Shown here: positions 1,016 to 61,191 of the stretch, in pieces | How the letters are laid out: each line of letters opens with the position of its first letter | Numbering within the stretch: position 1 is the stretch's first letter | Virus record (IMG/VR): IMGVR_UViG_3300049793_000366 | Location: 1 to 64,000 of that record | Length of the DNA stretch: 64,000 bases | Direction: 5' to 3' (one strand) | The notes under the pieces: generated by a model | Seen by the model: only the letters and a program-made list of their open reading frames with translations | Told to the model about the DNA's origin: nothing | Database searches by the model: none | Program-made: the position numbers and the translations under genes

Positions 1016-1675
1016 ATGAAACAGTACCCATCCATACCTTATTGGTCATCCGATTTACTCGGTGAGTCTTGTATTGCATTTGATAAGCTGGATGGATCTA
1101 ACATTCGCTGTGAATGGAGCAGAAAGCGTGGTTGGTATAAATTTGGCACCAGAACACAAATGATTGATGAACGAAATGAAAACTTCGGTGATGCTATACC
1201 ATTATTTCTTGATAAGTATGGTGATGATTTGGGTAGAGTTTTTCATGACAGACAATATAAATCAAAACCTAATTATGTCGCTTTCTTCGAATACTTAGGA
1301 CCTAATTCATTTGCTGGCCAGCATTCAATAACTGATAAAAAAGATGTTGTTCTTCTCGACATATCAGAATATAAACGTGGTTTAATACCACCAAAAGAAT
1401 TTGTTCAAAACTTCGGACATCTACATATTCCGAATATAATCTATCAGGGATATCTAAATCAACAATTTATCGATGATATTAAAAATGGGCAATACCCAGT
1501 AGATGAAGGTGTTATGTGCAAAGGTACTCGAAAAACCAAGGGTAGTGAGCTTATTTGGATTGCTAAAGTCAAAACAAAATCTTGGGTAGATAAAGTAAAA
1601 GCCAAGTATGGCGCAGAATGGACAAGGAAAGAACTTAATGGTGATAAAAATCTCATAGATTATTTTAATATATAA
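1016..1675 (+). CDS. ATP-dependent RNA ligase family protein
   Basis: Ligase motifs: I KLDGSN, III FFEYLG, IIIa LLDI, IV EGVMCK, V AKVK. Confidence 0.75.
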   Translation: MKQYPSIPYWSSDLLGESCIAFDKLDGSNIRCEWSRKRGWYKFGTRTQMIDERNENFGDAIPLFLDKYGDDLGRVFHDRQYKSKPNYVAFFEYLGPNSFAGQHSITDKKDVVLLDISEYKRGLIPPKEFVQNFGHLHIPNIIYQGYLNQQFIDDIKNGQYPVDEGVMCKGTRKTKGSELIWIAKVKTKSWVDKVKAKYGAEWTRKELNGDKNLIDYFNI

Positions 1676-1678
1676 TTT

Positions 1679-2035
1679 GTGATTCTGTTTAAGTGGTTAA
1701 ATGAGCAATATATACAACTTAGCTCTTATTTGCGTACTATACAAAAAGCCAAAACCAGTAGAATAGAAGTTGAAAGTGATGTCAAAGGTATCATTGATTT
1801 CTTTCACTACAATGGTGTATATAGCATAAGAGACTACCATGAGTTGAATGATTTAGAAAAATCATTCATAAAATCGATGCTTCGTACCAGAAGCAGACAG
1901 CATCAAATCGAAGTCGAGTTTCATTTAGAATTAGAACTTGCCAATAAGCAACAGTTGAAGCGTATGTTAAAAATGTACGAAGAAGAAGAGAATTATGAAA
2001 AGTGTTCTGTGATTAAGAAGAAGATTGATTCGTAA
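1679..2035 (+). CDS. hypothetical protein with C-terminal UVR (UvrB/C)-like motif
   Basis: Ends EEENYEKCSVIKKKI; start codon uncertain. Confidence 0.5.
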   Translation: MILFKWLNEQYIQLSSYLRTIQKAKTSRIEVESDVKGIIDFFHYNGVYSIRDYHELNDLEKSFIKSMLRTRSRQHQIEVEFHLELELANKQQLKRMLKMYEEEENYEKCSVIKKKIDS

Positions 2036-2480
2036 CATACTTTATGTTATAGAATATTTGAATTGGACATTTGTATTTCTTAAAATCTTTAAATTGAAGC
2101 ATATCAAAGTCAACACAATGATAGGGACCGAAATCATCTTCTCCTTTTAAATCTTGTTCATCGCAAAATTTGAAATCATATTTTAATGTAAACCTTACAA
2201 ACTCCTTTAATAAATAATCTCTTATAAAGAGTTTAGCCTCTTCGTAACTGGAATTATTATACATCGCTGTAATAGTTTCAATATCTGAATCATTCGGAAC
2301 AATTTCAGCACTTATTGTAAATACGTTACTTGGTTCATCAACTACATCGTAGTATACCTCTAATTCATTAACTTCATACGAACACTCTTCGAAATATAGA
2401 GATACCCATTCTTTAACTTTCTGTGTTGATAGAAATTCAGAATTCTCCGTAAGAAGCTTAAATGACTTTAAATATTTCAT
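2013..2480 (-). CDS. hypothetical protein, N-terminal MKYLKSF family
   Basis: MKYLKSFKLLTE; TAATATATA directly upstream. Confidence 0.7.
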   Translation of the reverse strand: MKYLKSFKLLTENSEFLSTQKVKEWVSLYFEECSYEVNELEVYYDVVDEPSNVFTISAEIVPNDSDIETITAMYNNSSYEEAKLFIRDYLLKEFVRFTLKYDFKFCDEQDLKGEDDFGPYHCVDFDMLQFKDFKKYKCPIQIFYNIKYVTNQSSS

Positions 2481-2484
2481 AAAT

Positions 2485-2528
2485 TATATATTAAAAATAA
2501 CCATACAAGATTTGGATTATAATATATA
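2485..2528. promoter_or_regulatory. back-to-back TAATATATA motifs (putative late promoters)
   Basis: Minus 2485-2493, plus 2520-2528. Confidence 0.6.
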
Positions 2529-2532
2529 CCTT

Positions 2533-3252
2533 ATGATTGAATTGAATAAGGTTTACCACGACGATTGTATAAATATTCTAAAGCAAATCAGCGATAAGTC
2601 AGTAGACTTAATACTTACAGACCCTCCGTATATAATTTCACGCAAGAGCAATTTCATTCACGCAACTGAGAATATAGATCCAGTAGTGGTTGGTAAGTTC
2701 TACAAACATTCAATCGATTTTGGTGATTGGGATAAAGAACAACTTAACATTGATGAATTGTTTGCCGAATTCAGTAGAATATTAAGACCCGGTGGAACAG
2801 TGATATGGTTCTATGATGCTTGGAAGATTGGTGAGATAAAGGATATAGCGGAAGGCTTAGACTTTAAGCAACCAAGAATATGTCAATGGGTTAAGAATAA
2901 TCCAGTACCAGTAAACTCTAAACACAATTACCTATCAAATGCTATTGAGTTCTTTGTAACATTTGTAAAGAGAGGTAAGCCAACATTTAATTCGCAATAT
3001 GATAATGGAATTTATAATTACCCAATCTATCACGCGAAAGATAGATTTCACCCAACTCAAAAGCCAATAGAATTATTTAAGGAATTGATTATAAAGCATA
3101 GTGATGAAAATATGATTGTACTTGATCCATTTGCGGGTTCTTCCACGACAGCCATTGCGGCTATGGAAACAAACAGACGATGGATTATGATTGAAAAAAA
3201 TATTGAATATTATGAGAAATCCATCGAAAGACTTAAGCTCGTATATCAGTAG
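2533..3252 (+). CDS. DNA N6-adenine/N4-cytosine methyltransferase (beta class)
   Basis: LTDPPY, HPTQKP, LDPFAGS in beta-class order; ATG 2533 preferred to TTG 2512. Confidence 0.9.
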   Translation: MIELNKVYHDDCINILKQISDKSVDLILTDPPYIISRKSNFIHATENIDPVVVGKFYKHSIDFGDWDKEQLNIDELFAEFSRILRPGGTVIWFYDAWKIGEIKDIAEGLDFKQPRICQWVKNNPVPVNSKHNYLSNAIEFFVTFVKRGKPTFNSQYDNGIYNYPIYHAKDRFHPTQKPIELFKELIIKHSDENMIVLDPFAGSSTTAIAAMETNRRWIMIEKNIEYYEKSIERLKLVYQ

Positions 3253-3412
3253 TATCGTAGATACAATAACAAAGGATGACCCTGTAAGAAAAAGGTGGTT
3301 TCCGGAATATCTCAAGATGAAGTATGTGGATAGATTATCTGCTGAAACATTAGAGGGATTCTGTTTCAGAATGGAGAGAGACAGAAAAATAGATTACATT
3401 ATTAATATATAA
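3212..3412 (+). CDS. small hypothetical protein with C-terminal RDRKIDYII motif
   Basis: Overlaps the methyltransferase end; shared C-terminal motif. Confidence 0.55.
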   Translation: MRNPSKDLSSYISSIVDTITKDDPVRKRWFPEYLKMKYVDRLSAETLEGFCFRMERDRKIDYIINI

Positions 3413-3415
3413 ATT

Positions 3416-7085: not shown

Positions 7086-7116
7086 GTTGGTTATATGAAT
7101 TTAGTAGAGTGAAAGT

Positions 7117-7425
7117 TTAATTAAATAGCCTGTTTATTTGCGTATCTCTGGCTGATTCTGTATCTAAAACATTAAATACGTGAGCATCAAGTTCATAGAA
7201 CATACCAGATTCATAGATTCTGAGCGTACCACGGTCATTTAACACAGATATAGAACTACCATTCAGTTTAATTATTTTGTATATCTTCCCAGGTGTTAAT
7301 GCCGCATTGGCATACGCTCCCCATCTTGGGTTATCAAACCTATAATAAGCATATCGGGATTCACTTGTAACCCTGGCTTGTTTTTTAATTTTAGCTTTAT
7401 CTACTTTTAATCCGTTAAACCACAT
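7117..7425 (-). CDS. hypothetical protein with C-terminal RDTQINRL motif
   Basis: LTPGKIYKI core plus shared C-terminal motif. Confidence 0.65.
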   Translation of the reverse strand: MWFNGLKVDKAKIKKQARVTSESRYAYYRFDNPRWGAYANAALTPGKIYKIIKLNGSSISVLNDRGTLRIYESGMFYELDAHVFNVLDTESARDTQINRLFN

Positions 7426-8935: not shown

Positions 8936-8967
8936 CAAATATACGGAACATAAATGAAAAATACAAA
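8936..8967 (-). promoter_or_regulatory. Bacteroidota primary-sigma promoter
   Basis: TTTG-N20-TATATTTG upstream of the glutamate-synthase-like gene. Confidence 0.75.
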
Positions 8968-15528: not shown

Positions 15529-15560
15529 CAAATGTAATACAATCCTTTAAAATATGCAAA
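15529..15560 (-). promoter_or_regulatory. Bacteroidota primary-sigma promoter of gltX
   Basis: TTTG-N20-TACATTTG. Confidence 0.75.
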
Positions 15561-16097: not shown

Positions 16098-16928
16098 TTA
16101 TTTTGCTCTAAAAGTTTCGTACTGAATTTGTCCGTTTTTGTAGAAGAATCTTAACCATCTTCCACCTAATGATGGCGGTGCAAATCCTTTCATGTTTTCC
16201 CACTGACCATTTGTTGAGTCTTTGTAAGTTCCCAACTGAAGGTGTTCTTGTTCGTAAATAACTTGATTACCTTGGTCATTAAGTTTCATTCTTGGACGTG
16301 ATAAAGCAAACTCGGTGTGAATGTGACCCGATACTAAAATATCAGCATCAATAAAATCTTGTCTACGTGCTGTTGATAACACACCTCTTGTTACTGGAGA
16401 GTTACCACCTGAACCGTGAGTGTAGTACATAGTTTTTGCTACTCTAGATCCACCAGCTTCGTGTTCGAATTGGAATCTAATCCAACCAGTGTATTTTCCT
16501 TTGATGATATTTGGATTAACTTTCTCAATTAATCTATCAGTCAAATTAATTTCCTGACGATTTTGAATACTGATTTCGTGGTTACCCTCAGCAATCATAA
16601 TGATATTATCTTTATACTTTTGTAAGTATGAAGCCGCATCATTTACAACAGCATCGAAATAACTACCTTTACAATACTCTGGTCTGATGTCTGATTTCCC
16701 AGAACGTGGGTCATACTTACCACCCATTACATCGAAGAAATCACCGAAGTCTAAAATACCGGCTCCTTTTTCAAGTGCTTCATCGTGGTGTATCTTTAGC
16801 ATACCCCTTTCACATTTTTTATTATCGTAATGTACGTCTGAGTGCAATAAGAACCACTGCTCCCAATCTTTTTGATAGGTCATTCTAATAACCACACAAT
16901 CATTTTTAATTTCGGTTTTGTAAGCCAT
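16098..16928 (-). CDS. calcineurin-like metallophosphoesterase
   Basis: SDVH, GDFFD, GNHE, THG, GHIH; likely start MAYKTE at 16928 after CAATATATA. Confidence 0.85.
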   Translation of the reverse strand: MAYKTEIKNDCVVIRMTYQKDWEQWFLLHSDVHYDNKKCERGMLKIHHDEALEKGAGILDFGDFFDVMGGKYDPRSGKSDIRPEYCKGSYFDAVVNDAASYLQKYKDNIIMIAEGNHEISIQNRQEINLTDRLIEKVNPNIIKGKYTGWIRFQFEHEAGGSRVAKTMYYTHGSGGNSPVTRGVLSTARRQDFIDADILVSGHIHTEFALSRPRMKLNDQGNQVIYEQEHLQLGTYKDSTNGQWENMKGFAPPSLGGRWLRFFYKNGQIQYETFRAK

Positions 16929-17331
16929 CTTGGATTGTTTTGTTTTGTACTGTATATATTGAATCCTGATGGTGTTTACTTGAAAGATATTATTTTGTGA
17001 AATTATTCGACCAAAGCTGTTTTTTTGTAGACGGACTTCATTTTCTTTACTACCAAAATTGTAGAAACTTTTCCACGGATTATACCCTGGTAAAGTGGTA
17101 TGAGTATTTTGATAATTAGTGAAGTTCATTCCGTAAAGAGTTGTGTGTCAGTGTGTTACTTATCGATGTACGGATGGTATATTATTTGAGAGACCAGAAA
17201 TACTCGAATTGTGTGAGCAAAAATAACTCTTTTTATGTAACATTTTCTACAATGTTCATTAATCTTTTCAACACTCATTTGTTAATAATGCGAAAAAGTC
17301 GATTCACCGAACCTCTGAAAGCCTTTATCGA

Positions 17332-17643: not shown

Positions 17644-18210
17644 TTAAGCTACTAAATCATTTCCTTCACCAGGAACGACTTTACCGAATACAGCTTTTGC
17701 TTTCACTAAATATTTCTTTCTATCATCGAAGCCATTTAACCCACCATTAACAAGCTTAGTTATTTTGGTAACATCATCTAAGTCAGCATACTTATTTAGA
17801 TTTCTCTTATTCCAAAACCATCCTGCTGAGATAATTCCCCACTGATGATTTTCTAATAATAAAGGTTGATTTACGAAATCAACACCAAGGTCTTTAGTTA
17901 AAGATGCGTAGTTTGCTCTTCCTGTGATTTGAATAACACCTCTTCCTTTAAATCGGACACCATCACCAGGATTAACATTACCTAAATCTTTTCTACCTTC
18001 GTATGCTGTACCAGAAGCAAGCTCTCTGAAGTAAATAAATGAACCTGACTCATGTAACACTTGTGCTAAAAAGTGACACACACGCAATGTGGTGTTTATC
18101 TGATACTTTTCTAAGCACTCGTTAAGAGGACCAACTAATTCAGTTAGTAATGTAACGTTTTTGGTAGATGCTATTGCTTTTAATTGCTCAAGTGTTATAT
18201 ATGTTTTCAT
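17644..18210 (-). CDS. glycoside hydrolase family 19 endolysin
   Basis: FLAQVLHESG..RE, YEGRKDLGN, GRGVIQITGRANY, AGWFW, TKLVNGGLNG. Confidence 0.9.
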   Translation of the reverse strand: MKTYITLEQLKAIASTKNVTLLTELVGPLNECLEKYQINTTLRVCHFLAQVLHESGSFIYFRELASGTAYEGRKDLGNVNPGDGVRFKGRGVIQITGRANYASLTKDLGVDFVNQPLLLENHQWGIISAGWFWNKRNLNKYADLDDVTKITKLVNGGLNGFDDRKKYLVKAKAVFGKVVPGEGNDLVA

Positions 18211-18263
18211 TGTAATACATAGTTTTTTTATATATTAAAATGAAAACAGGGATTTGTGCTAAT

Positions 18264-19205: not shown

Positions 19206-20408
19206 TTAGTTCTTATTTTCATAGATTGACTTCCTAACATCCAACATTAATTCGCCAACTAATTCGTGGTGAACTTCATCTGGGATATCGGCATTATCAA
19301 ATGCTTGGTCAATTTCTTTTATTTTCACTTCTGCTTCATTAATAAGAGTTTGTAAATCAACTTGTCCCTTTCTTATAGAAATTAAATATTGAGCATCCGG
19401 TCTTCTAACAATAACACCTTTCCCATCAGCTATCTCTTTAGCCATATTCAAAAGTCTTTGACAGTGTAACATATTCTTACCGTCTATTTTTTGACCATGT
19501 GCTTCAACATCTACCCAACGAGCATCGTTTTTGTTTTTCAACCAATCTTGATAAGACCTGTAATCATCGCAGTGCTGTGAATAACCATCCCTATTATATG
19601 AGATATAACCCAGAAATCCATCAGTATCTTTTGGTATAGAAGAAAGTCGTATTGTATTCGAATCTTCAAATGCAATACCCTTATATCCTTTACCTGGAGA
19701 CAGTTTGAATCCGTTCAAAGTAAGTAGGTTTGAAAGTTTAAATATAAACTTTGTTACTTTTCTCGCTCTTAATGATATCTTCTCAGAATGTAATGCAACT
19801 GAGTCATAATCATAAAACATAGAATAAACATCCCTTGCGTGTGGAAGAGCAGCTAAGCCACAAAACATTTGGTCAAGACCTCTATCTGTTAGATATTTAT
19901 TTAACGGAATAGATTTTTCACCAGCGAAAAAATATGCGAAGTCAATTGGATGTTTCCTTTCAACTTTACCCTTTTCCCAGTTTACTTTTTTATTCTGACC
20001 CTTTGCTTTAGAAATTTGTTGTCTCGCATAACCACCAAAACTCTGCTTACATTTTTTTGTAATGAATTTGTCTTTTTCTTTTAAAATTAATTCAAAAGCT
20101 GGGTGCTTATAGATTATACAATCTTCTGGTGTGTTTAACAGCTCAATCATTGTAGGATTGGCGGTTGCCAGTAATTCTAAGAATCTTTTCAATTCATAGA
20201 AAACTGTATCGTTCTTATCATCATTGACCTGCTCTTTATAATTATTACTTAGGATATCATCTTGACTTTGTATGTAAACACCAGCATAATCTTCATCAGA
20301 AGATGCAATATTTGTCCCATACGCATGAGAACCCCTTAGTGTAATAAACAGAGGGATGGCGTTTGGACAACGCTGGTGTATAAAGTCTTTGAAGTATTCT
20401 AATTTCAT
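19206..20408 (-). CDS. Pol-beta superfamily nucleotidyltransferase (RlaP/NrdC.11-like)
   Basis: GSHAYGTN..SDEDYAG, ANPTMIELL, FGGYA..Q, DGKNMLHCQRLL. Confidence 0.85.
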   Translation of the reverse strand: MKLEYFKDFIHQRCPNAIPLFITLRGSHAYGTNIASSDEDYAGVYIQSQDDILSNNYKEQVNDDKNDTVFYELKRFLELLATANPTMIELLNTPEDCIIYKHPAFELILKEKDKFITKKCKQSFGGYARQQISKAKGQNKKVNWEKGKVERKHPIDFAYFFAGEKSIPLNKYLTDRGLDQMFCGLAALPHARDVYSMFYDYDSVALHSEKISLRARKVTKFIFKLSNLLTLNGFKLSPGKGYKGIAFEDSNTIRLSSIPKDTDGFLGYISYNRDGYSQHCDDYRSYQDWLKNKNDARWVDVEAHGQKIDGKNMLHCQRLLNMAKEIADGKGVIVRRPDAQYLISIRKGQVDLQTLINEAEVKIKEIDQAFDNADIPDEVHHELVGELMLDVRKSIYENKN

Positions 20409-20548: not shown

Positions 20549-20557
20549 TAATATATA
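20549..20557 (+). promoter_or_regulatory. putative late promoter of the fibre cluster
   Basis: TAATATATA. Confidence 0.6.
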
Positions 20558-20580: not shown

Positions 20581-21486
20581 ATGCCTAATACATATAGCTT
20601 TTTCGGATCAGCAACGTACTCAACAACTACTGCTACACTAGACGAGTTAATGGCAAATTTGCCAGATAACAACGCTAACTTAATTGATCCAAAAGATTTA
20701 AGAGATACTGCTTTCACATTATGGGATAGAATCGATATATTATCCGCTTCTGTTTCAGCGGGTGGCTCCTTTTCTGCTGAGTACTTAAGACCAACGCCTA
20801 CCGCAATAGCAGTTGGCGGAGCATCTATTGGTACTACATTTAGCGGAACTGTTCAAGATGCTTTGGATAAAATATTATACCCATACATAGGACCAGATTG
20901 TTCTTTATCAGGTGGTGGTAATAGAGAATTCGGTTCAACTACCTCAGTTACATTAACTTGGTCAGTTACCAAAAATTCCAATCCAATTGCGACAATCACA
21001 GTTGATGGTAATCCTATTTTTCCAACAGGAAACAATCAATCTGGCGCTCAAGGTGCTACTGCTACTGCTAACGTTAATACAACATTCAATATGTCAACAA
21101 CTGACGGTACATCATCAGATAGCGCGAGTACAACAGTTACTTGGTTGAACAGAAGATATTGGGGTATATTCCCAACATTCACAGCGTTGAATAGCGCACA
21201 AGTACTTGGTTTAACTGGTGCTGGTTTAGGTACGGGTAATGAGTTGTCTTCAACAAGAGTTCAAACAAGAAACGGTATTAATGGCGGAGGTAACTACATT
21301 GTATTTGCTTGGCCAACAACATTCGGTACACCAACATTTATTATAAATGGTTTACCTAACTCAGCATGGACTAAAATAAATAATTCATTCTCATTTACTA
21401 ATGCGAATGGGTATGTAAATAATTATGATGTTTGGATTTCTAACACGATTCAAAACTCACCAATAACAACGTTTCAAATTAATTAA
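20581..21486 (+). CDS. virion structural protein (fibre/appendage)
   Basis: Thr/Gly/Ser-rich, beta-rich; first gene of a co-oriented cluster behind TAATATATA. Confidence 0.65.
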   Translation: MPNTYSFFGSATYSTTTATLDELMANLPDNNANLIDPKDLRDTAFTLWDRIDILSASVSAGGSFSAEYLRPTPTAIAVGGASIGTTFSGTVQDALDKILYPYIGPDCSLSGGGNREFGSTTSVTLTWSVTKNSNPIATITVDGNPIFPTGNNQSGAQGATATANVNTTFNMSTTDGTSSDSASTTVTWLNRRYWGIFPTFTALNSAQVLGLTGAGLGTGNELSSTRVQTRNGINGGGNYIVFAWPTTFGTPTFIINGLPNSAWTKINNSFSFTNANGYVNNYDVWISNTIQNSPITTFQIN

Positions 21487-21491
21487 GCAAT

Positions 21492-23423: not shown

Positions 23424-23439
23424 AAATAAAGGTTAAAGA

Positions 23440-24147
23440 ATGGCTCAAATACCGGGAAGTATACCAATTACAGGTCTCTTAGCAACGACTGACTCAACTG
23501 ATAACTATGCTATCATTGATCCTCAATATGGTATTGATGGTTTAAGAAACGTTGCCACACAGGCTGACCGAAATAATATCTCTCTTCTTAGAAGAAGGGA
23601 AGGTATGATTGTTGGTACACTTGATGATGGTTCTTATTGGAGGCTTACTGCTTCAACAGGAAGCAATACGTGGGCATTGGGTTCAGCTAGTAACTGGGAG
23701 CTATGGACTGTAGCTGGTGGTAGTGGTAATGCTTCACAGAATAAATATTATATTGCGCCGAGTGATACCGTTATCGTTGCTACATATTCACAATACTGGA
23801 TATATGGTAACTTAACCATTGATGGTGTATTGGAAAATTATGGACAAGTAGTTATAGCAAACGGTATTATGGATTTAAGTGGCGGTGGAACATTTTCTAA
23901 TAGTGGTACATTATTATTTGAGACTCTTAGTGTTGGTGATAATATGACTAAATACTCAGCTACATTTTCATCAAGTGCTAACACACCTTTTACGATTTCA
24001 CATAATTTAAATACATTAGACTTTGTAGCATCTGTTAGAGAAGGTACAAATTTAATAAATGTAGATATCAATATTGTTGATAATAATAGTATAGAAGTGA
24101 CTTCTTCACAGAATGTAACTGCTAGGATAAACATAATTGGACTATAA
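23440..24147 (+). CDS. virion structural protein (fibre module)
   Basis: Shares modules with 21492 and 24147. Confidence 0.65.
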   Translation: MAQIPGSIPITGLLATTDSTDNYAIIDPQYGIDGLRNVATQADRNNISLLRRREGMIVGTLDDGSYWRLTASTGSNTWALGSASNWELWTVAGGSGNASQNKYYIAPSDTVIVATYSQYWIYGNLTIDGVLENYGQVVIANGIMDLSGGGTFSNSGTLLFETLSVGDNMTKYSATFSSSANTPFTISHNLNTLDFVASVREGTNLINVDINIVDNNSIEVTSSQNVTARINIIGL

Positions 24148-24725
24148 TGGCAAGTAATAAAATATACAACATACAAGATTGGGCTAATGTAGGTTCGGTT
24201 AGTGTACCAGGGGCTTCTTCATCTAAGATTTATCCTAAGGTAGACGGTTGGTACGTTATGAATTCTGGTGGAGTGGAAAGTAAACTTGCTACATCAGGTG
24301 ATACAAGCGATATTCAGAATAAGTATTATATAGAGCCTACTGAATTTGTTAGCGTTGCTACATATTCACAATATTTAGTATATGGTGACCTTAAGGTAGA
24401 TGGTATACTTGAGAACTTTGGTCAAGTAGTTATTTTAAACGGTACTTTAGATTTAACTGGTGGTGGAACATTTTCTAATAGTGGTACATTGTTGTTAAAA
24501 ACATTACAAACTGATTCTGAAAAGAAATATTCAGCAACGTTTTCATCAACTGCTAATACACCATTTACTATTACACATAATTTAAATACATACAGCTTTG
24601 TTCATTCATTCAGGTCTGGTTTAAATATAATATCAGCACAGGTTAATATAGTTGACACAAATAGTATTACGGTAACCACAACACAAAACGTAACGAATGT
24701 TGAAATAAATATAATTGGCATATAA
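24147..24725 (+). CDS. virion structural protein (fibre module)
   Basis: Shares modules with 23440 and 24725. Confidence 0.65.
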   Translation: MASNKIYNIQDWANVGSVSVPGASSSKIYPKVDGWYVMNSGGVESKLATSGDTSDIQNKYYIEPTEFVSVATYSQYLVYGDLKVDGILENFGQVVILNGTLDLTGGGTFSNSGTLLLKTLQTDSEKKYSATFSSTANTPFTITHNLNTYSFVHSFRSGLNIISAQVNIVDTNSITVTTTQNVTNVEINIIGI

Positions 24726-25219: not shown

Positions 25220-25223
25220 TAAT

Positions 25224-27730: not shown

Positions 27731-27732
27731 AG

Positions 27733-28011
27733 ATGTCATTCATTCAAAACATAGACGCATCCAGAATTAAAGGCATTGATGCTTTAATAACTTTAGGTAA
27801 AACACAATCAAGCGGTGTTACATTTAGTGCATCTGTTACTAATACAATTACACACAATCTTAATAGCACAGGTATTGTTGTTCAGATGTGGGATGTATCA
27901 ACAGGTGAAGCTATTTATGGAACACTAGATAACAGAACTTTAACAACAGTTGATATAACACTTTCGGCTACATTTAGCTCACCTGGTGTTGATATAATCA
28001 TTATTGGATAA
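27733..28011 (+). CDS. small virion structural protein
   Basis: TITHNLNS module shared with 23440 and 24147. Confidence 0.6.
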   Translation: MSFIQNIDASRIKGIDALITLGKTQSSGVTFSASVTNTITHNLNSTGIVVQMWDVSTGEAIYGTLDNRTLTTVDITLSATFSSPGVDIIIIG

Positions 28012-28126
28012 ACTTTATTTTTAAACTTAATATATAATTGAATAGAAACCCTTTTGTGTAGTTGATTTGTGTGGTGGGTTAAAAATAAACAGTATATGGA
28101 TTCCTCGGATACCGATAAACAATTAA

Positions 28127-28702: not shown

Positions 28703-28745
28703 TGTCTATATATTAAACAAACAATTTAATTTAACTATAACATCT

Positions 28746-30601: not shown

Positions 30602-30634
30602 TATATATTAAAAGAGCAAAGTATTTAATATATA
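30602..30634. promoter_or_regulatory. back-to-back TAATATATA motifs
   Basis: Minus 30602-30610, plus 30626-30634. Confidence 0.6.
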
Positions 30635-34462: not shown

Positions 34463-34510
34463 ACTTACATCCCAGATAGGATATAACTTAAAAATTAAAA
34501 CTTAAAAACA

Positions 34511-37749: not shown

Positions 37750-37769
37750 GATTTTATATATTTAATTTT

Positions 37770-43519: not shown

Positions 43520-43555
43520 TATATATTATTTGTTAGCCGTTACATTTAATATATA
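43520..43555. promoter_or_regulatory. back-to-back TAATATATA motifs
   Basis: Minus 43520-43528, plus 43547-43555. Confidence 0.6.
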
Positions 43556-44377: not shown

Positions 44378-44780
44378 TAGGAATATTAAAAAATTCGTAG
44401 ATTATTACAAGAATGATAAGAATATATCAGGTGATGATAATAGGAAGCTAGTCAAATATGTAGACGAGAATATGATGTTTGACTTCAAAGACAATGATAT
44501 CGAATATAGTATATATGGTCACTACGACTTTAACTACGGTAGTTATCAGGGTTTAGTTGTTCAAATATTCAGACATAGTAATAGTGATTCAGAACTTGGT
44601 GCTTGCTTCAATGGTAAGGAAAATTGCGTAATCTATGATGATGCGTGTCCATTATATCCATATATACTTAAGCTACACCAAAAGGTAAATACTCTTATTA
44701 AGACTGAGCTTCATGTTGAGTCAGACACAACAGTAGTTACTATTACTTTTAGTTTTCTGGATGGCAAAATTAATATATAA
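44361..44780 (+). CDS. hypothetical protein (RNIKKFVDY near N-terminus)
   Basis: Variant of the N-terminal motif. Confidence 0.65.
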   Translation: MYVRDSRNIKKFVDYYKNDKNISGDDNRKLVKYVDENMMFDFKDNDIEYSIYGHYDFNYGSYQGLVVQIFRHSNSDSELGACFNGKENCVIYDDACPLYPYILKLHQKVNTLIKTELHVESDTTVVTITFSFLDGKINI

Positions 44781-50884: not shown

Positions 50885-50946
50885 TTAATTAAAAAGTTCT
50901 TTTGTTATTGTATTGATAATCCACGCATTTGTTTAATATATAACAC

Positions 50947-51172: not shown

Positions 51173-51204
51173 TTTGGTCACATATAAACTTTTGTTTATA
51201 TTTG
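51173..51204 (+). promoter_or_regulatory. Bacteroidota primary-sigma promoter
   Basis: TTTG-N20-TATATTTG. Confidence 0.7.
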
Positions 51205-51545: not shown

Positions 51546-51577
51546 TTTGCTTATTCTGAATTAATTACATATATTTG
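51546..51577 (+). promoter_or_regulatory. Bacteroidota primary-sigma promoter of the ileS leader
   Basis: TTTG-N20-TATATTTG. Confidence 0.75.
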
Positions 51578-51774: not shown

Positions 51775-54003
51775 ATGAAAGAGAAAAACCTAAATATGCC
51801 TCAAACAGACTTCACACAGAGGTCAGAGTCATTGAAACGAGAACCAGAATTACTTAAACTCTGGAATGAGCTTGATGTACTTAAGCTTAGAAATGAATTA
51901 AATAGTGATACATTCACTTTACACGATGGACCGCCGTATGCTAACGGTGATGTTCACGTTGGTCACGTACTTAATAAAGTATTAAAAGATATGGTTGTTA
52001 AGTATCAACTAATGAGTGGTAAGAAAGTCAATTTCAGACCAGGATTTGACTGTCATGGTTTACCAACTGAATTAGCTGTTCTCAAAAAGCATGGCAAACT
52101 TGATGTGTCTGAACTGAGAGTTAAATGTAAAGAGTGGGCAACTGAGTATTCAGATAAGCAACGCGAATCATTTAAATCATTGGGTGTTTTCGCTGAATGG
52201 GATAACCCGTATTACACGATGTCACCTGAGTTCGAAGTTGGACAGCTTAAAGTATTATATAAGCTCTTAAACGATGGATTGATGTATCTTGATAGTAGAC
52301 CTGTGTATTACTCACCATCATCAAGAACTGTTTTAGCCGAATCAGAGCTTGAATATAAAAACAGAAAAGACAAATCTGCCTATTTCACCTTGGATGCCGA
52401 AGATGGTAGATTATTATTGGTTTGGACTACACAACCTTGGACAGCGTTAGGTAACGTAGCTGTTTGTGTTAATAACAGACTGACGTATGTAACAGTTGAA
52501 CAAGATTCTAAACTATATGTTGTTGCTAAGGATTTAGCTCACGTATTGAGTGGTGTTGTTGTAGATGAATATAGTGGTGAGAGTCTTGTTGGTCTTAAGT
52601 ATCACAATAAACTAACTAATACAGAGGGTGTTGTTGTGTCTGATAAATTCGTTAAGTCAAATAGTGGTACTGGTTTAGTACACTTATGTCCAGCACATGG
52701 TGAGGATGACTTCGATGTGTGTCAGAAACATAATCTATCATGTGATGATTTGACTGATTCTGGTGGTAAACTTCTTCTGAATGGGTTATTCTGTTTAGAC
52801 CAAGGTTCAGAGTCAGTTCTTGATATGATGAAAGAAAATGGTATGTTATATTCAACGTCTGAATATGAACACTCTTATCCACATGACTGGCGAACAAACG
52901 GACCTGTTTATTTTAAGCTAACTGAGCAATTCTTCCTTGATTTGGCTGAGTTAAAAGAGAAAGTATTAGCTGTCCTACCTACTGTTGATTTCACAGAAGA
53001 GCGTTGGAAAAACAGATTAACGAATATGTTGAATTTAAGAGACCGTTGGTGTTTATCGCGTCAAAGAAAATGGGGATTCCCTTTAGCTGTATTTCTTAAA
53101 GACGGTAAGCCATTTACGCATCCAGAATTAGAAGCTCACTTATTTGAGTTGTTTAAGCAGAATGGCTCTGATGTTTGGTTTAACTCAACAGAAGATGAAT
53201 TATTACCTGAGCAATTTAAGAATACTGGTTTAGTTAAGTGTGATTATACATTAGATGTGTGGTTTGATTCTGGTGTTAGTTGGTATTCAGTTGTGGGTGG
53301 TCAATCAGATGTTTACTTCGAAGGTTCAGACCAACACAGAGGTTGGTTTCAGTCTTCATTACTAACATCAGTAGCAATGACTGGTGAAGCACCTTACAAA
53401 AAAGTACTTACACACGGATTTGTATTGGATGATAAGGGAAGAAAGATGTCTAAATCATTAGGTAATGTTGTAGAACCAAAGACTGTTCAACAAAAGTATA
53501 ATACTGATGTGCTTAGATTGTGGGCGGCTGTTGTTAACTATGGTGATGATGCACAATTAGGTGATGGTGTGTTGAAGAGCTGTTCTGAATATTATTTCAA
53601 ATTTAGAAATACGCTTAAATATTTACTTGGTAATATGTATGGGTATGATTTTAGAGAGGTACAGCTAAATGAAAAAGATAGACTGGCTCTTACTCGATGT
53701 GATGCTATGTATAATAATTGTTTAAAGTCATATTCCGAGTATAACTTCAGAAAAGTATTTGAAGAATTAATGTCGTGGGTTTCAGAATTTTCAAGTCAGT
53801 ACTTAGACAATCAAACAAAATCCTTTTTATATGAATATGATGTTAATTCCGATGAACGTCAACAATGTCAATATGTTCTTAGGTATGCATTAGAGCGTTT
53901 TATGAAAGTACTTGCTCCTATGTGTTCATTTTTAGCAGAAGACGCTTATCAACATTATGAGTTCAAACAAGATGTTTCTGTATTTATGGAAAAAATGGAA
54001 TAA
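51775..54003 (+). CDS. ileS: isoleucine--tRNA ligase (type 1), C-terminally shortened
   Basis: HDGPPYANG, HVGH, PGFDCHGLP, WTTQPWT, GTGLVH.CPAHG.DD, WCLSRQRKWG, EGSDQHRGWFQSSL, KMSKSLGN. Confidence 0.95.
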   Translation: MKEKNLNMPQTDFTQRSESLKREPELLKLWNELDVLKLRNELNSDTFTLHDGPPYANGDVHVGHVLNKVLKDMVVKYQLMSGKKVNFRPGFDCHGLPTELAVLKKHGKLDVSELRVKCKEWATEYSDKQRESFKSLGVFAEWDNPYYTMSPEFEVGQLKVLYKLLNDGLMYLDSRPVYYSPSSRTVLAESELEYKNRKDKSAYFTLDAEDGRLLLVWTTQPWTALGNVAVCVNNRLTYVTVEQDSKLYVVAKDLAHVLSGVVVDEYSGESLVGLKYHNKLTNTEGVVVSDKFVKSNSGTGLVHLCPAHGEDDFDVCQKHNLSCDDLTDSGGKLLLNGLFCLDQGSESVLDMMKENGMLYSTSEYEHSYPHDWRTNGPVYFKLTEQFFLDLAELKEKVLAVLPTVDFTEERWKNRLTNMLNLRDRWCLSRQRKWGFPLAVFLKDGKPFTHPELEAHLFELFKQNGSDVWFNSTEDELLPEQFKNTGLVKCDYTLDVWFDSGVSWYSVVGGQSDVYFEGSDQHRGWFQSSLLTSVAMTGEAPYKKVLTHGFVLDDKGRKMSKSLGNVVEPKTVQQKYNTDVLRLWAAVVNYGDDAQLGDGVLKSCSEYYFKFRNTLKYLLGNMYGYDFREVQLNEKDRLALTRCDAMYNNCLKSYSEYNFRKVFEELMSWVSEFSSQYLDNQTKSFLYEYDVNSDERQQCQYVLRYALERFMKVLAPMCSFLAEDAYQHYEFKQDVSVFMEKME

Positions 54004-54042
54004 AAAGTTAATATATAATTATAATAAAAATATTATAAATAC

Positions 54043-56075: not shown

Positions 56076-56111
56076 GTTGTATATATAAAGAAGAATTCTC
56101 GTTTTTTTATT

Positions 56112-56120
56112 TAATATATA
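56112..56120 (+). promoter_or_regulatory. putative late promoter of the tail tube gene
   Basis: TAATATATA. Confidence 0.6.
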
Positions 56121-58101: not shown

Positions 58102-58133
58102 CAAATATATATTAAATAATCCGGATTTCCAAA
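58102..58133 (-). promoter_or_regulatory. Bacteroidota promoter overlapping a TAATATATA motif
   Basis: TTTG-N20-TATATTTG; TAATATATA at 58106-58114. Confidence 0.7.
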
Positions 58134-59197: not shown

Positions 59198-59284
59198 TTT
59201 TCCATTGCTTATTTTTATAAGTCTTATAGAAGTTGTATTTCCAAAAGTTTAATATATACTAAAATTAAGTCCTGTAAGAACTGT

Positions 59285-59826: not shown

Positions 59827-59827
59827 C

Positions 59828-59954
59828 TGGTCTCATTTATCACCGTAACTCGTAAGCAAGAAGACCAATTCTCTTACTCACCACCTAATGAACAACAGAT
59901 ATTAATCTGAGCCCCATCTTTCCGATGGCATGATAAAGTGTATCTCTCGATACA
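59828..59954 (-). ncRNA. putative structured ncRNA downstream of tmRNA
   Basis: GAGA-tetraloop hairpin; closing stem TTTATCAT/GTGATAAA enclosing three hairpins; possible TGGTCT/AGACCA pseudoknot. Confidence 0.5.
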
Positions 59955-59955
59955 G

Positions 59956-60348
59956 GGTGGAGAAGACGGGAATCGAACCCGTGTCCAATGATATCAGTGA
60001 ACTACTTTCTACAAGTTTATTTTAGTTTTCTAACTAAACCAAATAATCAATTTTTTTAACGACTAAAGAGATAATATGTCGCCGATTCAGTTATATACCA
60101 CTTGTGTCGAGAACTGTGGTTCCGAAGATTTTGTCGATTTTAAGCAATCTCAAGTTCTTCAACTTGAGTAGCAGTAGTCTTAGACTTTGCTAATACACTT
60201 AAAATATCGGATAACGATCCGACTTCGTTTGTAATTACGTTGCCGTTTACAGATTTTATCTACTAATTTATTAATCGCACGTTTTATTAGACAAAGCGAT
60301 ACTTGCTTATAACTCTCATCTCATCACCGTCGAAGCCTTAACTTCCCC
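59956..60348 (-). ncRNA. ssrA: tmRNA
   Basis: 5' GGGGAAG pairs with 3' CTTCTCC-A giving G3:U; TTCGAC D-loop analogue; T arm ACGGG-TTCGATT-CCCGT; internal tag frame 60244-60140. Confidence 0.93.
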
Positions 60349-60368
60349 GTTTACTGATTAAAGTATGA

Positions 60369-60377
60369 TATATATTA
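60369..60377 (-). promoter_or_regulatory. putative late promoter of tmRNA
   Basis: TAATATATA 20 nt upstream of the tmRNA 5' end. Confidence 0.6.
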
Positions 60378-60411
60378 CAATGGAAAAGGAAAGTTTTTCT
60401 ATTTTGAATAT

Positions 60412-61143
60412 TTATTTTCTTAATTTATCTTGTTCATCCATTATTCTCAACATTTCTGGTTCATTACCAGCTTGAATAGCCTTTCTCAACTCTTTATTTA
60501 AGTCATCATATCTTTTATTATTAGCCCACTTTTGTAATTCACCTTCATCACTACCTAAGCCATATCCATACCTATATACTTGAATAACTAATAATAAAAG
60601 CTCTGGATATTCTTCATCTTCATGGTCTTCTATAAACTTTTTATAAATATTTCTATCATTTATTGATTGTTGTATATCTATACACGTAGCTAATACCGAT
60701 CCAGATTTTATCTCTGGCCCTTTATAGTTTAACTTCTTATCATCTATTTTATCAAAATTAGCCATCTTCATCATATCCGACATTAGCTCTTGAAAATCCA
60801 CTCTGAAATCTGAATTTGGATTTAATGGTTTATGATAACCAATACTATACCCAACATTAATTATGTATGCTACTAATTGCTGAGTGGATGATTTTGGTGT
60901 ATTAAATATCTCAGTATATGTAATATCACCGAAGTGTTCATCAATAATACTTTTTATTTTATTATCATCAAGATAATCTAATTGATAGTTTGTTGTTATT
61001 AGTTTAGTTATAACATTCACAAATTCTACTAAATGTTCCTTAGCATATTCAACGTCAGCTTGTGTACTAGCATTCATAGCCGCTATTTGTTTATCAAGCT
61101 CATCTCTATCAAAGCTTTCGTTAAATTTCTTAAGATATTTCAT
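60412..61143 (-). CDS. hypothetical protein, N-terminal MKYLKKFNES
   Basis: True start likely 61143; TAATATATA at 61149-61157. Confidence 0.7.
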   Translation of the reverse strand: MKYLKKFNESFDRDELDKQIAAMNASTQADVEYAKEHLVEFVNVITKLITTNYQLDYLDDNKIKSIIDEHFGDITYTEIFNTPKSSTQQLVAYIINVGYSIGYHKPLNPNSDFRVDFQELMSDMMKMANFDKIDDKKLNYKGPEIKSGSVLATCIDIQQSINDRNIYKKFIEDHEDEEYPELLLLVIQVYRYGYGLGSDEGELQKWANNKRYDDLNKELRKAIQAGNEPEMLRIMDEQDKLRK

Positions 61144-61156
61144 ATAATTATATATT

Positions 61157-61191
61157 AAAAAAGCCACTTAAATTTCTTTAAGTGGCTTTTT
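61157..61191 (-). terminator. intrinsic terminator
   Basis: AAAAAGCCACTTAAA..TTTAAGTGGCTTTTT. Confidence 0.8.

What the first reader, a model, noticed from the sequence alone, without database searches (positions are those of the whole stretch)
1666..61157. TAATATATA: candidate late-promoter motif, often in back-to-back pairs
Seen about 20 times, almost always just upstream of a gene start. Plus strand: 1666, 2520, 3403, 20549, 28028, 30626, 43547, 44771, 50934, 54009, 56112, 59250. Minus strand: 2485, 18229, 28707, 30602, 43520, 58106, 60369, 61149. Variants occur before 37749, 56075, 63071 and 16928. It precedes fibres, tube, tape measure, baseplate, endolysin and tmRNA, often only 4-6 nt before the ATG. 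Known: T4 late promoters are a single TATAAATA box read by gp55. Inference: an analogous box for a phage sigma factor, producing nearly leaderless mRNAs.
Basis: partly seen in the sequence, partly recalled or inferred. Interest (0 to 1): 0.6.

Follow-up and report, generated by a model that had tools for sequence, protein, structure and literature searches.

The report
Megaphage late promoter box TAATATATA
A short DNA word, TAATATATA, marks about 120-180 probable late-gene promoters in a 508-kb uncultivated megaphage of Bacteroidota; the phage encodes a T4 gp55-like sigma factor to read it, and nearly half of the boxes sit so close to the start codon that the mRNAs should have no leader.

Summary
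All 20 sites exist (5.1 expected). The window is the first 64 kb of a 507,910-bp IMG/VR megaphage of the Lak/huge-phage clade. TAATATATA is the most frequent 9-mer of the genome: 117 copies, 99 of them wholly or partly intergenic, although only 8.4% of the genome is intergenic. In co-directional gaps 48 of 49 copies point at the downstream gene. There is no -35 element. The distance from box to ATG is bimodal: 4-6 nt, which equals the box-to-start spacing of Bacteroidota RNA polymerase and so predicts leaderless mRNA, or about 19-37 nt.

The box precedes the portal, prohead protease, major capsid, gp25-like baseplate, endolysin, fibre-like and sheath-operon genes and the tmRNA. It is kept upstream of orthologous head genes in three divergent relatives. 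A 121-aa gp55-like sigma is encoded at 89.6 kb; its best fold match is T4 gp55. No phage RNA polymerase, gp33 or sliding clamp was found.

Two further promoter classes fit a cascade: a host sigma-A type (TTTG..TAnnTTTG) and AAACTT-N13-17-TATAA[CT], which sits before replication genes and the gp55-like gene. No RNA data exist, so start sites and timing are untested. I rate it a new variant of a known kind.

The parts
1666..1674 (+). Class-B box, exact; GTG 1679 lies 4 nt downstream (ORF 1679-2035, doubtful gene)
2485..2493 (-). Class-B box, exact; ATG 2480 lies 4 nt downstream (leaderless; 155-aa protein starting MKYLKSF); divergent partner of 2520
2520..2528 (+). Class-B box, exact; ATG 2533 lies 4 nt downstream (leaderless; 239 aa)
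3403..3411 (+). Class-B box, exact; ATG 3416 lies 4 nt downstream (leaderless; 218 aa, MKHIRTF tag)
16953..16961 (-). Variant box TCAATATATA; ATG 16928 lies 24 nt downstream (exonuclease-like ORF 16098-17129, in frame)
18229..18237 (-). Class-B box, exact; ATG 18210 lies 18 nt downstream: endolysin 17644-18210
20549..20557 (+). Class-B box, exact; ATG 20581 lies 23 nt downstream: head of the 8-gene + strand operon 20581-28011, which has virion structural and tail-fibre PHROG hits
28028..28036 (+). Exact box with no called gene downstream (376-nt gap 28012-28387); overlaps a class-C-like AAACTT..TATAAT at 28010
28707..28715 (-). Class-B box, exact; ATG 28702 lies 4 nt downstream (leaderless; 104 aa, MKYLKSF tag)
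30602..30610 (-). Class-B box, exact; ATG 30597 lies 4 nt downstream (leaderless; 160 aa); divergent partner of 30626
30626..30634 (+). Class-B box, exact; ATG 30707 lies 72 nt downstream (1099-aa protein, no family hit)
37755..37763 (-). Variant box TAAATATATA; ATG 37749 lies 5 nt downstream (leaderless; 661 aa, phrog_25468)
43520..43528 (-). Class-B box, exact; ATG 43493 lies 26 nt downstream: 1907-aa fibre-like protein with a CBM5/12 domain; divergent partner of 43547
43547..43555 (+). Class-B box, exact; ATG 43561 lies 5 nt downstream (leaderless; 129 aa, MRFLKKF tag)
44771..44779 (+). Class-B box, exact; ATG 44799 lies 19 nt downstream (467 aa, phrog_1250)
50934..50942 (+). Class-B box, exact; ATG 50947 lies 4 nt downstream (leaderless; 74 aa)
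54009..54017 (+). Class-B box, exact; ATG 54043 lies 25 nt downstream (142 aa, MKHIKTF tag)
56080..56088 (-). Variant box TTTATATATA; ATG 56075 lies 4 nt downstream (leaderless; 130 aa)
56112..56120 (+). Class-B box, exact; ATG 56198 lies 77 nt downstream; a second variant box, TAAATATATA with its core at 56166, lies closer to that ATG
58106..58114 (-). Exact 9-mer embedded in a host-type class-A promoter TTTGGAAATCCGGATTATTTAATATATATTTG; ATG 58072 lies 33 nt from the 9-mer
59250..59258 (+). Class-B box, exact; ATG 59285 lies 26 nt downstream (170 aa, MKYIKMF tag)
60369..60377 (-). Class-B box, exact; 20 nt upstream of the 5' end of the tmRNA
59955..60348 (-). tmRNA gene, a non-coding target of a class-B box
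   Evidence: ARAGORN; Rfam RF00023, 83.6 bits
61149..61157 (-). Class-B box, exact; ATG 61143 lies 5 nt downstream (leaderless; 243 aa, MKYLKKF tag)
63112..63120 (-). Variant box CCAATATATA; ATG 63071 lies 40 nt downstream (313 aa, phrog_36717)
8936..8967 (-). Class-A host-type promoter TTTG-N-TCCGTATATTTG, 17 nt before ATG 8918 (operon 8918-5764, which includes a dehydrogenase). Shown for contrast; not a class-B site
51546..51577 (+). Class-A host-type promoter TTTG..TATATTTG upstream of the class-I tRNA synthetase gene 51775-54003. Shown for contrast
7090..7118 (-). Class-C promoter AAACTTT-N16-TATAAC, 4 nt before ATG 7085. Shown for contrast

Best explanation
TAATATATA (core ATATATA, fuller consensus tTTAATATATA[c/a]) is the -10-like box of the late promoters of this megaphage. 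I infer that host RNA polymerase core carries the phage's 121-aa gp55-like sigma, which has a sigma region-2 domain only, and that this sigma recognises the single box without any -35 contact, as T4 gp55 does with TATAAATA. The last eight bases, AATATATA, match the T4 box at six of eight positions. One of the two mismatches (-13, A for T) also occurs at nine T4 late promoters. The other is -9 (T for A). In T4 the -9 base is held by N13 and H95, and the residue aligned with H95 here is F75.

Transcription should start 4-5 nt after the box, as with Bacteroidota polymerase. In about 45% of the gene-associated sites (81 of 178) that start is the A of the ATG, giving leaderless mRNAs. In the rest a short leader without a Shine-Dalgarno sequence follows.

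The box belongs to a three-tier programme:
1. Host sigma-A promoters (TTTG-N19-21-TAnnTTTG), found before small-gene arrays and auxiliary genes.
2. A bipartite AAACTT-N13-17-TATAA[CT] class, found before DNA polymerase, helicase, topoisomerase and the gp55-like gene. Its likely reader is the phage's 206-aa sigma, which has regions 2 and 4.
3. The TAATATATA class, found before virion and lysis genes and N-terminally tagged proteins.

Shown here: the statistics, positions and orientation of the motif, its conservation in relatives, the gene content downstream, and the presence and fold of the sigma. Inferred: which sigma reads which class, the transcription start sites, the timing, and that the leaderless mRNAs are translated.
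For: Abundance and placement
- 20 sites in the window against 5.1 expected.
- 117 in the genome, the commonest 9-mer.
- 90 fully and 9 partly intergenic against 18 coding; about 50-fold in density. The core ATATATA is about 21-fold enriched.

Orientation
- 48 of 49 sites in co-directional gaps point at the downstream gene.
- 47 sites in 8.4 kb of divergent gaps against 2 in 7.4 kb of convergent gaps.

Architecture
- No conservation between -50 and -5, only T at -1 and -2.
- Sites with no nearby gene lack the flanking consensus.

Spacing
- Bimodal, 4-6 nt and about 19-37 nt.
- Flavobacterium promoters have 4-5 nt between the -7 box and the start; Bacteroides 5' UTRs peak at 23 nt (PMC6847099; PMC7366714).
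- The host-type and class-C promoters of the same genome show the same 4-nt leaderless register.
- 86 of 90 starts at this spacing are ATG.

A non-coding target
- The tmRNA has a box 20 nt upstream, which argues against a translation signal.

Downstream genes
- Portal, prohead protease and major capsid each have their own box.
- So do the gp25-like baseplate wedge, the endolysin, fibre-like proteins and the sheath operon.

Conservation
- All 12 upstream regions of portal, protease and capsid orthologues in this genome, LR745206, LR756504 and LR756501 keep ATATATA 13-32 nt before the start (measured from the end of the core) while the flanks diverge. The upstream region of the gp55-like gene lacks it in all five genomes examined, the fifth being Prevotella phage Lak-C1.
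- In 80 related IMG/VR loci (1.12 Mb) it is again the top 9-mer, with the same two spacings.

Reader
- gp55-like sigma.
- By the BLASTP alignment, four of the seven T4 DNA-pocket residues are identical and one is conservatively replaced.
- No RNA polymerase genes: PF00562, PF00623 and PF00940 all blank.

Partition of promoter classes
- Class A, about 24-fold intergenic density.
- Class C, 17 intergenic against 3 coding, with scrambled controls flat. It sits before DNA polymerase, helicase, topoisomerase II and gp55, and is conserved upstream of gp55 in relatives.
Against: - There are no RNA data. The only public run that holds this DNA is a soil metagenome, so no start site, timing or sigma dependence has been observed.
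- gp33 (phrog_254) and a sliding clamp (PF09116, PF02916, phrog_223, PF00712, PF00705) were not detected. The sigma is 64 residues shorter than T4 gp55 and lacks an equivalent of the helix-loop-helix segment described as critical in T4. The T4 activation mechanism therefore cannot simply be transferred.
- The box also heads units that are not obviously late: the tmRNA, the first tRNA cluster, and the operon that holds the 206-aa sigma.
- Many downstream genes have no known function, so 'late' rests on a minority of annotated genes.
- The T4 consensus TATAAATA itself is not notably enriched here (2.8-fold).
- In 40 kb each of two cultured Bacteroidota jumbo phages that carry a gp55-like gene, no dominant TATATA box was seen.
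- Gene starts come from my own ORF caller, not from curated annotation.
Confidence: 0.82

Rival explanations
1. The box is a real phage promoter, but it is read by something other than the gp55-like protein: the phage's 206-aa region-2 plus region-4 sigma, or host sigma-A re-targeted by an unknown phage appropriator.
For: The 206-aa sigma is a firm sigma-70 family member (Pfam r2 61 bits, r4_2 51.5 bits). The gp55-like protein lacks the T4 helix-loop-helix and the clamp partners. One exact 9-mer lies inside a host-type promoter (58106).
Against: A sigma with region 4 is expected to need a -35 element, and the box has none. A separate bipartite class, AAACTT..TATAA[CT], is there to serve it. 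The 206-aa sigma gene itself lies in an operon headed by a TAATATATA-type box. The box lacks the TTTG that is nearly invariant in host -7 elements (PMC6847099).
Confidence: 0.08
2. The box is a general or constitutive phage promoter rather than a late-specific one.
For: It precedes about 125 of the 320 genes that have an upstream gap of 25 nt or more. These include the tmRNA, a tRNA cluster, a methyltransferase-containing unit and many genes of unknown function.
Against: Every identified virion and lysis gene examined has it. The replication genes and the gp55-like gene carry class C instead, and the small-gene arrays and the tRNA synthetase carry class A. T4 also has late promoters in front of non-structural genes, by general knowledge of T4.
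Confidence: 0.07
3. The motif is a translation-initiation or mRNA element (an AT-rich ribosome landing site) rather than a promoter.
For: Bacteroidota lack Shine-Dalgarno sequences and use A/T-rich upstream regions (PMC6847099). The motif is often only 4-6 nt from the ATG.
Against: There are two discrete spacings, not one. It precedes the non-coding tmRNA. It is absent from most internal operon genes. Divergent gaps carry one copy per direction. The spacing equals the box-to-start distance of the polymerase.
Confidence: 0.02
4. The motif is a chance by-product of AT-rich, low-complexity intergenic DNA.
For: The genome is 33% G+C, and TATATA-like strings are common in AT-rich spacers.
Against: Other 9-mers of the same composition have a median of 41 copies against 117 and show no positional link to starts. 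The orientation bias is 48 to 1. Positions 4-9 tolerate no substitution. The core is conserved in orthologous spacers whose flanks have diverged.
Confidence: 0.01

Closest known systems
Bacteriophage T4 late promoters (8-bp TATA box, consensus TATAAATA by general knowledge) read by gp55 with gp33 and the gp45 sliding clamp
   Same: A single AT-rich -10-like box, no -35 conservation, either polarity, and dozens of copies in front of virion and lysis genes (PMC2988020). A gp55 homologue is encoded, with the same fold and most of the DNA-pocket residues. Six of eight box positions are identical. The sigma gene itself is driven by a different, earlier promoter class.
   Different: The box differs at -9 (T for A) and is fixed as an alternating TATATA. 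The sigma has 121 residues against 185, without the helix-loop-helix segment and without the T4-type acidic-hydrophobic C-terminus; it has its own conserved tail, ISLxSSNDGxGLHSL. gp33 and gp45 were not detectable. The host is Bacteroidota. Nearly half of the gene-associated sites are placed for leaderless mRNAs, which is not a feature of T4 late genes.
Bacteroidota housekeeping promoters (sigma-ABfr: -33 TTTG, -7 TAnnTTTG)
   Same: The same register: the box ends 4-5 nt before the presumed start. The same genome carries clear examples, including leaderless ones.
   Different: The TAATATATA box lacks the TTTG part and any -33 element. It also serves a different set of genes.
Leaderless-mRNA gene architecture (mycobacteria, Deinococcus, archaea, lambda cI)
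   Same: The -10 box sits immediately upstream of an ATG, with a strong preference for ATG (86 of 90).
   Different: Here it occurs in a phage of a phylum where only about 3.7% (Bacteroides) or 13% or fewer (Flavobacterium) of transcripts have leaders under 10 nt. It is tied to phage-specific promoter classes.
Phage sigma cascades such as Bacillus phage SPO1 (gp28, then gp33/34); comparison from general knowledge
   Same: Successive phage-encoded sigmas redirect the host core polymerase to middle and then late promoter classes.
   Different: The components are unrelated in sequence. The middle step here is only inferred from a promoter class and a 206-aa sigma gene.
Jumbo-phage promoters read by phage multisubunit RNA polymerases (phiKZ, AR9)
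   Same: Short AT-rich late promoter elements and short leaders in a very large phage genome (PMC5312081 was listed but not read).
   Different: No beta, beta-prime or T7-like polymerase genes were detected here, and a sigma-based system is present instead.

Membership tests
T4-type (gp55-dependent) late promoter | A single -10-like AT-rich box with no conserved -35 element | tested here: met
   Position-wise information over 117 sites: nothing above 0.3 bit between -50 and -3, only T at -1 and -2. T4 definition from PMC2988020.
T4-type (gp55-dependent) late promoter | Box sequence TATAAATA | tested here: not met
   The consensus here is TAATATATA. Its last eight bases match T4 at 6 of 8 positions. 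TATAAATA itself is only 2.8-fold enriched in intergenic DNA.
T4-type (gp55-dependent) late promoter | Precedes virion and lysis genes, in either orientation | tested here: met
   Portal, prohead protease, major capsid, gp25-like wedge, endolysin, fibre-like proteins, sheath operon. Both strands.
T4-type (gp55-dependent) late promoter | The genome encodes a gp55 homologue (sigma region-2 domain) | tested here: met
   phrog_234, E 1.4e-7. BLASTP to T4 gp55, E 1e-3. Profile to PDB, top hit 7d7c_F. Foldseek top hit 7d7c_F, TM 0.71.
T4-type (gp55-dependent) late promoter | gp55 helix-loop-helix segment and C-terminal sliding-clamp-binding epitope | tested here: not met
   The protein ends at residue 121. 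The model shows four helices (5-96) and then a low-confidence tail. The tail is conserved in the clade but unlike T4's. T4 features from PMC7892883 and PMC2988020.
T4-type (gp55-dependent) late promoter | gp33 co-activator encoded | tested here: not met
   phrog_254 (the family that T4 gp33 itself hits) finds nothing in the genome at E <= 10. A very divergent homologue cannot be excluded.
T4-type (gp55-dependent) late promoter | Sliding-clamp activator (gp45) encoded | tested here: inconclusive
   PF09116, PF02916, phrog_223, PF00712 and PF00705 are all blank. A gp44-like clamp loader is present, E 1.6e-57, so a divergent clamp is likely.
T4-type (gp55-dependent) late promoter | Transcripts start about 6 nt after the box, late in infection, and depend on gp55 | not testable with these tools
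   No RNA run holds this sequence.
Bacteroidota sigma-A promoter | -7 element TAnnTTTG, with or without -33 TTTG | tested here: not met
   The box has no TTTG and no -33 element. Genuine sigma-A-type promoters exist separately in the genome.
Leaderless mRNA genes | Start codon at the transcription start: ATG at the polymerase's box-to-start distance | tested here: met
   81 core sites have an ATG 3-7 nt after the box, with a mode at 4. The host spacing is 4-5 nt. 96% of starts at this spacing are ATG. This is geometry only.
Leaderless mRNA genes | Mapped 5' triphosphate end at the A of the AUG, and translation of that RNA | not testable with these tools
   No RNA or ribosome-profiling data.
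ECF-type or bipartite sigma promoter | -35 element with an AAC core at a fixed distance from the -10 element | tested here: not met
   Absent from TAATATATA sites. Present in the separate class AAACTT-N13-17-TATAA[CT].

The most novel reading that the evidence does not exclude
The Lak/huge-phage clade of Bacteroidota megaphages may run a T4-like early, middle and late programme with a minimal, region-2-only gp55 that works without gp33 or a recognisable clamp. It would make a large share of its late (and some early and middle) mRNAs leaderless, in a phylum where leaderless mRNAs are rare. The same late promoters would drive about 59 otherwise unrelated proteins that carry a common N-terminal tag, MK[HY][LI]KxF[EN]E, resembling the T4 capsid-targeting sequence. 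That would mean a very large set of proteins packaged in the head, and perhaps injected.
Probability: 0.4. Interest if true: 0.75.

Novelty: new variant of a known kind. Interest (0 to 1): 0.62.

Why it matters
Megaphages of the Lak/huge-phage clade are known only from metagenomes, and most of their genes have no known function. In the papers I could search, sigma factors in these phages are mentioned only in passing and no promoter analysis is given.

A promoter code that can be read from sequence gives three things:
- It sorts hundreds of unknown genes into likely temporal classes.
- It corrects start codons. Many longest-ORF starts lie upstream of the box.
- It extends the T4 gp55 late-transcription paradigm to a distant lineage and to Bacteroidota polymerase, with a natural minimal version of the sigma.

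The predicted wholesale use of leaderless mRNAs in a phylum without Shine-Dalgarno sequences is a testable statement about how these phages get their late proteins translated. The box together with the shared N-terminal tag marks a candidate set of capsid-internal proteins.

Tried and rejected
- RNA evidence. The look-up of sequencing runs returned one DNA run (soil metagenome, possibly the source sample) and no RNA run. I therefore did not use read laying, because contigs of a DNA run cannot show start sites.
- Near-identical phage records: none by megablast.
- T4 partners. gp33 (phrog_254), gp45 (PF09116, PF02916, phrog_223), bacterial beta clamp (PF00712) and PCNA (PF00705) were all blank. 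This says little about very divergent homologues.
- T4 prohead protease Pfam PF03420 was blank, and its control genomes did not ring either. The PHROG search later found a head maturation protease.
- Phage RNA polymerases PF00562, PF00623 and PF00940 were blank. The PF00940 control did not ring, so that one is weak.
- A single-sequence search of the sigma against PDB sequences missed gp55. The clade profile and the fold search found it.
- An upstream GGAAAAAA element seen about 27-30 nt before the box at head genes in four phages is only 3-4-fold enriched genome-wide. I dropped it as a general promoter element.
- Lak-C1 (26% G+C, other genetic code): TTAATATAT is the top 9-mer in 40 kb, but I could not show positional association with starts.
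- Cultured Bacteroidota jumbo phages pT24 and MA9V-1 show no dominant TATATA box in 40 kb each; inconclusive.
- Literature string search for TAATATATA with 'phage' and 'promoter': nothing relevant.
- The search for homologous proteins, the search of protein representatives and complex prediction were not used. The family scans settled the sigma, and no clamp partner was identified to test.

Full report
**What the window is.** The 64-kb window is the first eighth of a single 507,910-bp contig with 33% G+C. IMG/VR lists it as a virus record, and CheckV rates it 97% complete. It has no near-identical record among deposited phages. Its gp55-like protein is 80%, 78%, 62% and 48% identical to those of the 634-735-kb 'uncultured phage' genomes LR745206, LR756502, LR756504 and LR756501. 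It is 40% identical to those of the Prevotella Lak megaphages. More distant matches are in Sphingomonas phage PAU, Tenacibaculum phage pT24, Chryseobacterium phages MA9V, and cyanophage proteins annotated as late sigma factors. IMG/VR holds 241 stretches that encode a relative of this protein. The only public run holding the DNA is a soil metagenome.

**The observation.** Dinucleotide shuffles give 5.1 +/- 2.5, and none of 100 shuffles reaches 20.
- Genome-wide there are 117 copies, which makes it the most frequent 9-mer of the genome. The other 125 9-mers of the same composition have a median of 41 copies.
- I called 717 genes with a codon-usage ORF caller, covering 91.6% of the genome. Of the 117 copies, 90 are fully intergenic, 9 partly, and 18 inside called ORFs. 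That is about a 50-fold excess in density.
- Single-base variants show that positions 4-9 (TATATA) tolerate no change, while the first three positions do. The core ATATATA is about 21-fold enriched in intergenic DNA.
- Sites with a nearby gene share the longer consensus tTTAATATATA[c/a]. Sites with no gene nearby, half of them in coding sequence, show no flanking consensus and are probably chance copies.

**Position and orientation.** Of the 117 exact sites, 102 have a gene's ATG within 120 nt downstream on the same strand. Control 9-mers reach 13-24 such sites out of 34-77 copies.
- The distance from box end to ATG is bimodal. For exact sites, 31, 13 and 4 lie at 4, 5 and 6 nt, and a second group lies at about 19-37 nt. 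For the core, 81 sites lie at 3-7 nt and 97 at 15-40 nt.
- In gaps between co-directional genes, 48 of 49 copies point at the downstream gene.
- Divergent gaps hold 47 copies in 8.4 kb. Convergent gaps hold 2 in 7.4 kb.
- Back-to-back pairs occur at divergent gene pairs. A whole-genome scan lists 18 core pairs, two of which share a member; four are in the window.
- There is no conserved element between -50 and -5.

**Why the close spacing means leaderless.** The genome also carries promoters of the Bacteroidota housekeeping type.
- TTTG-N19-21-TAnnTTTG occurs 37 times in intergenic DNA against 16 in coding sequence, about a 24-fold excess in density. It often has the extended core TTTGGtAATCCGGAATATTATCCGTATATTTG.
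- Shine-Dalgarno-like words are not enriched before genes: 3.6% of genes against 5.0% of random windows. With the relatives' hosts, this places the host in Bacteroidota.
[quoted passage not shown] In Bacteroides thetaiotaomicron only about 3.7% of 5' UTRs are under 10 nt, and the commonest length is 23 nt (PMC7366714).
- The 4-5 nt gap here therefore puts the A of the ATG at +1. The second mode corresponds to leaders of roughly 15-30 nt.
- The host-type and class-C promoters of the same genome show the same 4-nt register in a subset. So this register is a property of the polymerase, not of one motif.
- Of the 90 start codons at this spacing, 86 are ATG.
- About 45% of the gene-associated boxes (81 of 178) are in the leaderless register, far above the host-phylum figures.

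**What lies downstream.**
- In the window: the endolysin (phrog_181, E 9e-61); a 1907-aa protein with a CBM5/12 domain; the operon 20581-28011, with virion structural and tail-fibre PHROG hits; the tmRNA; and many small proteins of unknown function.
- Just beyond the window, a boxed leaderless gene at 67570 heads the sheath operon.
- Elsewhere: the portal (phrog_213), the head maturation protease (phrog_207) and the major capsid protein (PF07068, phrog_138) each have their own box. The gp25-like baseplate wedge gene is leaderless behind a box.

**Conservation.** I compared orthologues of the portal, protease and capsid genes in LR745206, LR756504 and LR756501, which are 52-76% identical in protein. 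In all 12 upstream regions (this genome plus those three), an ATATATA core ends 13-32 nt before the start, while the flanks have diverged. The upstream region of the gp55-like gene lacks the core in all five genomes examined, the fifth being Prevotella phage Lak-C1. In 80 related IMG/VR loci (1.12 Mb, though these are orthologous regions and so not independent) TAATATATA is again the top 9-mer, with the same two spacings.

A 121-aa ORF at G000:89597-89962 lies next to a head-closure gene.
- It hits PHROG 234, 'late sigma transcription factor', at E 1.4e-7, and weakly hits Pfam Sigma70_r2.
- It aligns with T4 gp55 residues 10-120 at 23% identity, E 1e-3.
- A profile of the clade's proteins has T4 gp55 (7d7c_F) as its best hit among all PDB sequences, at E 0.035.
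- An AlphaFold model (pLDDT 77, four helices) has 7d7c_F as its best Foldseek match (E 2.3e-3, probability 1.0, TM 0.71). Sigma region-2 domains fill most of the rows below it.
- By the BLASTP alignment, the T4 residues that hold the flipped bases (N13, L54, R57, F86, H95, Y97, T99; PMC7892883) correspond to N5, T36, K39, F66, F75, Y77 and T79.
- If the boxes are aligned by their 3' ends, AATATATA differs from TATAAATA at -13 and at -9. A at -13 also occurs at nine T4 late promoters (PMC2988020). At -9 the T4 base is contacted by N13 and H95, and H95 is F here. This co-variation is an inference, not a test.
- The protein lacks the T4 helix-loop-helix region and ends in a different tail that is conserved across the clade.
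- gp33 and a sliding clamp were not found. A gp44-like clamp loader is present.
- No beta, beta-prime or T7-like polymerase was found.

**A third promoter class and the cascade.** AAACTT-N13-17-TATAA[CT] occurs 17 times in intergenic DNA against 3 in coding sequence, about a 46-fold excess in density. Scrambled -35 controls are flat.
- It sits before the N-terminal DNA polymerase B gene, a helicase, the topoisomerase II large subunit, an HNH endonuclease, an ATP-dependent protease and the gp55-like gene.
- The AAACTTT...TATAAC arrangement is conserved upstream of the gp55-like gene in many relatives.
- The genome encodes a 206-aa sigma with regions 2 and 4. That sigma is the natural candidate to read a bipartite promoter.
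- The class-A promoters concentrate in arrays of small genes at 280-507 kb. In the window they precede the tRNA synthetase and a dehydrogenase operon.
- The three classes therefore partition into small or auxiliary genes, replication genes plus the late sigma, and virion and lysis genes. This is the pattern of an early, middle and late programme. Which sigma reads which class is inferred.

**Rivals.**
- A translation signal is unlikely, given the two spacings, the tmRNA target and the polymerase-like register.
- Chance is excluded by the composition controls, the orientation bias and the conservation.
- Reading by the 206-aa sigma or by modified host sigma-A cannot be excluded, but it fits the missing -35 element poorly.
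- 'Late' could be wrong in the strict temporal sense, because the box also heads the tmRNA, one tRNA cluster and the operon holding the 206-aa sigma.

**Novelty and limits.** The kind of element, a gp55-type single-box late promoter, is textbook for T4. New here are the variant box, the minimal sigma without detectable gp33 or gp45, the Bacteroidota megaphage lineage, and the large share of leaderless units. In the searchable literature, the Lak paper mentions sigma factors only in passing and describes no promoters, and the phage G paper reports only generic promoter predictions.

Everything here is computed from sequence.

Noticed in passing
window 2480(-), 3416(+), 28702(-), 43561(+), 54043(+), 55696(-), 56863(+), 57459(+), 59285(+), 61143(-); 59 genes genome-wide: 59 proteins begin M-K-[HY]-[LI]-K-x-[FY]-[EN]-E-[FY]. 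Beyond residue 14 they fall into 54 BLAST-unrelated clusters, so this is a portable N-terminal tag. 38 of them have a TAATATATA-type box and none has a host-type promoter. The tag resembles the N-termini of the T4 internal proteins, MKTYQEFIAE and MKTFKEFTST, which carry the capsid-targeting sequence. A head maturation protease is encoded at G000:93393-95666. These may be proteins packaged in the head.
   Followed up: partly
window 8936-8967(-), 15529-15560(-), 51173-51204(+), 51546-51577(+), 58102-58133(-); G000 280-507 kb: Host-type Bacteroidota promoters TTTG-N19-21-TAnnTTTG, about 24-fold enriched in intergenic density. They often have a long conserved core, TTTGGtAATCCGGAATATTATCCGTATATTTG, and some are also in the leaderless register.
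   Followed up: partly
window 7090-7118(-), 28010-28038(+), 34461-34487(+); G000 89529, 102134, 105014, 344854, 373669, 442167: A third promoter class, AAACTT-N13-17-TATAA[CT] (17 intergenic against 3 coding). It sits before DNA polymerase, helicase, topoisomerase II, an HNH endonuclease, an ATP-dependent protease and the gp55-like gene, and is conserved upstream of the gp55-like gene in relatives. Its likely reader is the phage's 206-aa sigma at G000:112758-113378.
   Followed up: partly
window 28012-28387: A 376-nt stretch without a called gene, directly downstream of a boxed promoter. It could be a small RNA or a small protein. There is no Rfam match.
   Followed up: no
G000 319-432 kb; 121630-121702: About 61 tRNA genes lie in clusters. 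One ARAGORN call is a CTA-anticodon (amber-reading) 'tRNA-Pyl'. Several clusters are preceded by a hairpin followed by TTTTTTrTGCCTAAA, and the first cluster by an ATATATA box.
   Followed up: no
G000 102182-103699(+) and 274856-276301(-): The family-B DNA polymerase is split into two genes about 170 kb apart. The cultured relatives pT24 and MA9V-1 also have two polymerase genes, but these lie close together, next to the gp55-like gene.
   Followed up: no
window 51775-54003(+), 59955-60348(-), 19206-20408(-): Translation-related cargo in the window: a class-I aminoacyl-tRNA synthetase (PF00133, E 3e-110); a tmRNA with the unusual tag AKSKTTATQVEELEIA; and a nucleotidyltransferase (phrog_388).
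   Followed up: no
L003, L004, L005 and G000 90-97 kb: A GGAAAAAA-like A-tract lies about 27-30 nt upstream of the box at the portal, protease and capsid genes in four phages. Genome-wide it is only 3-4-fold enriched near boxes.
   Followed up: partly
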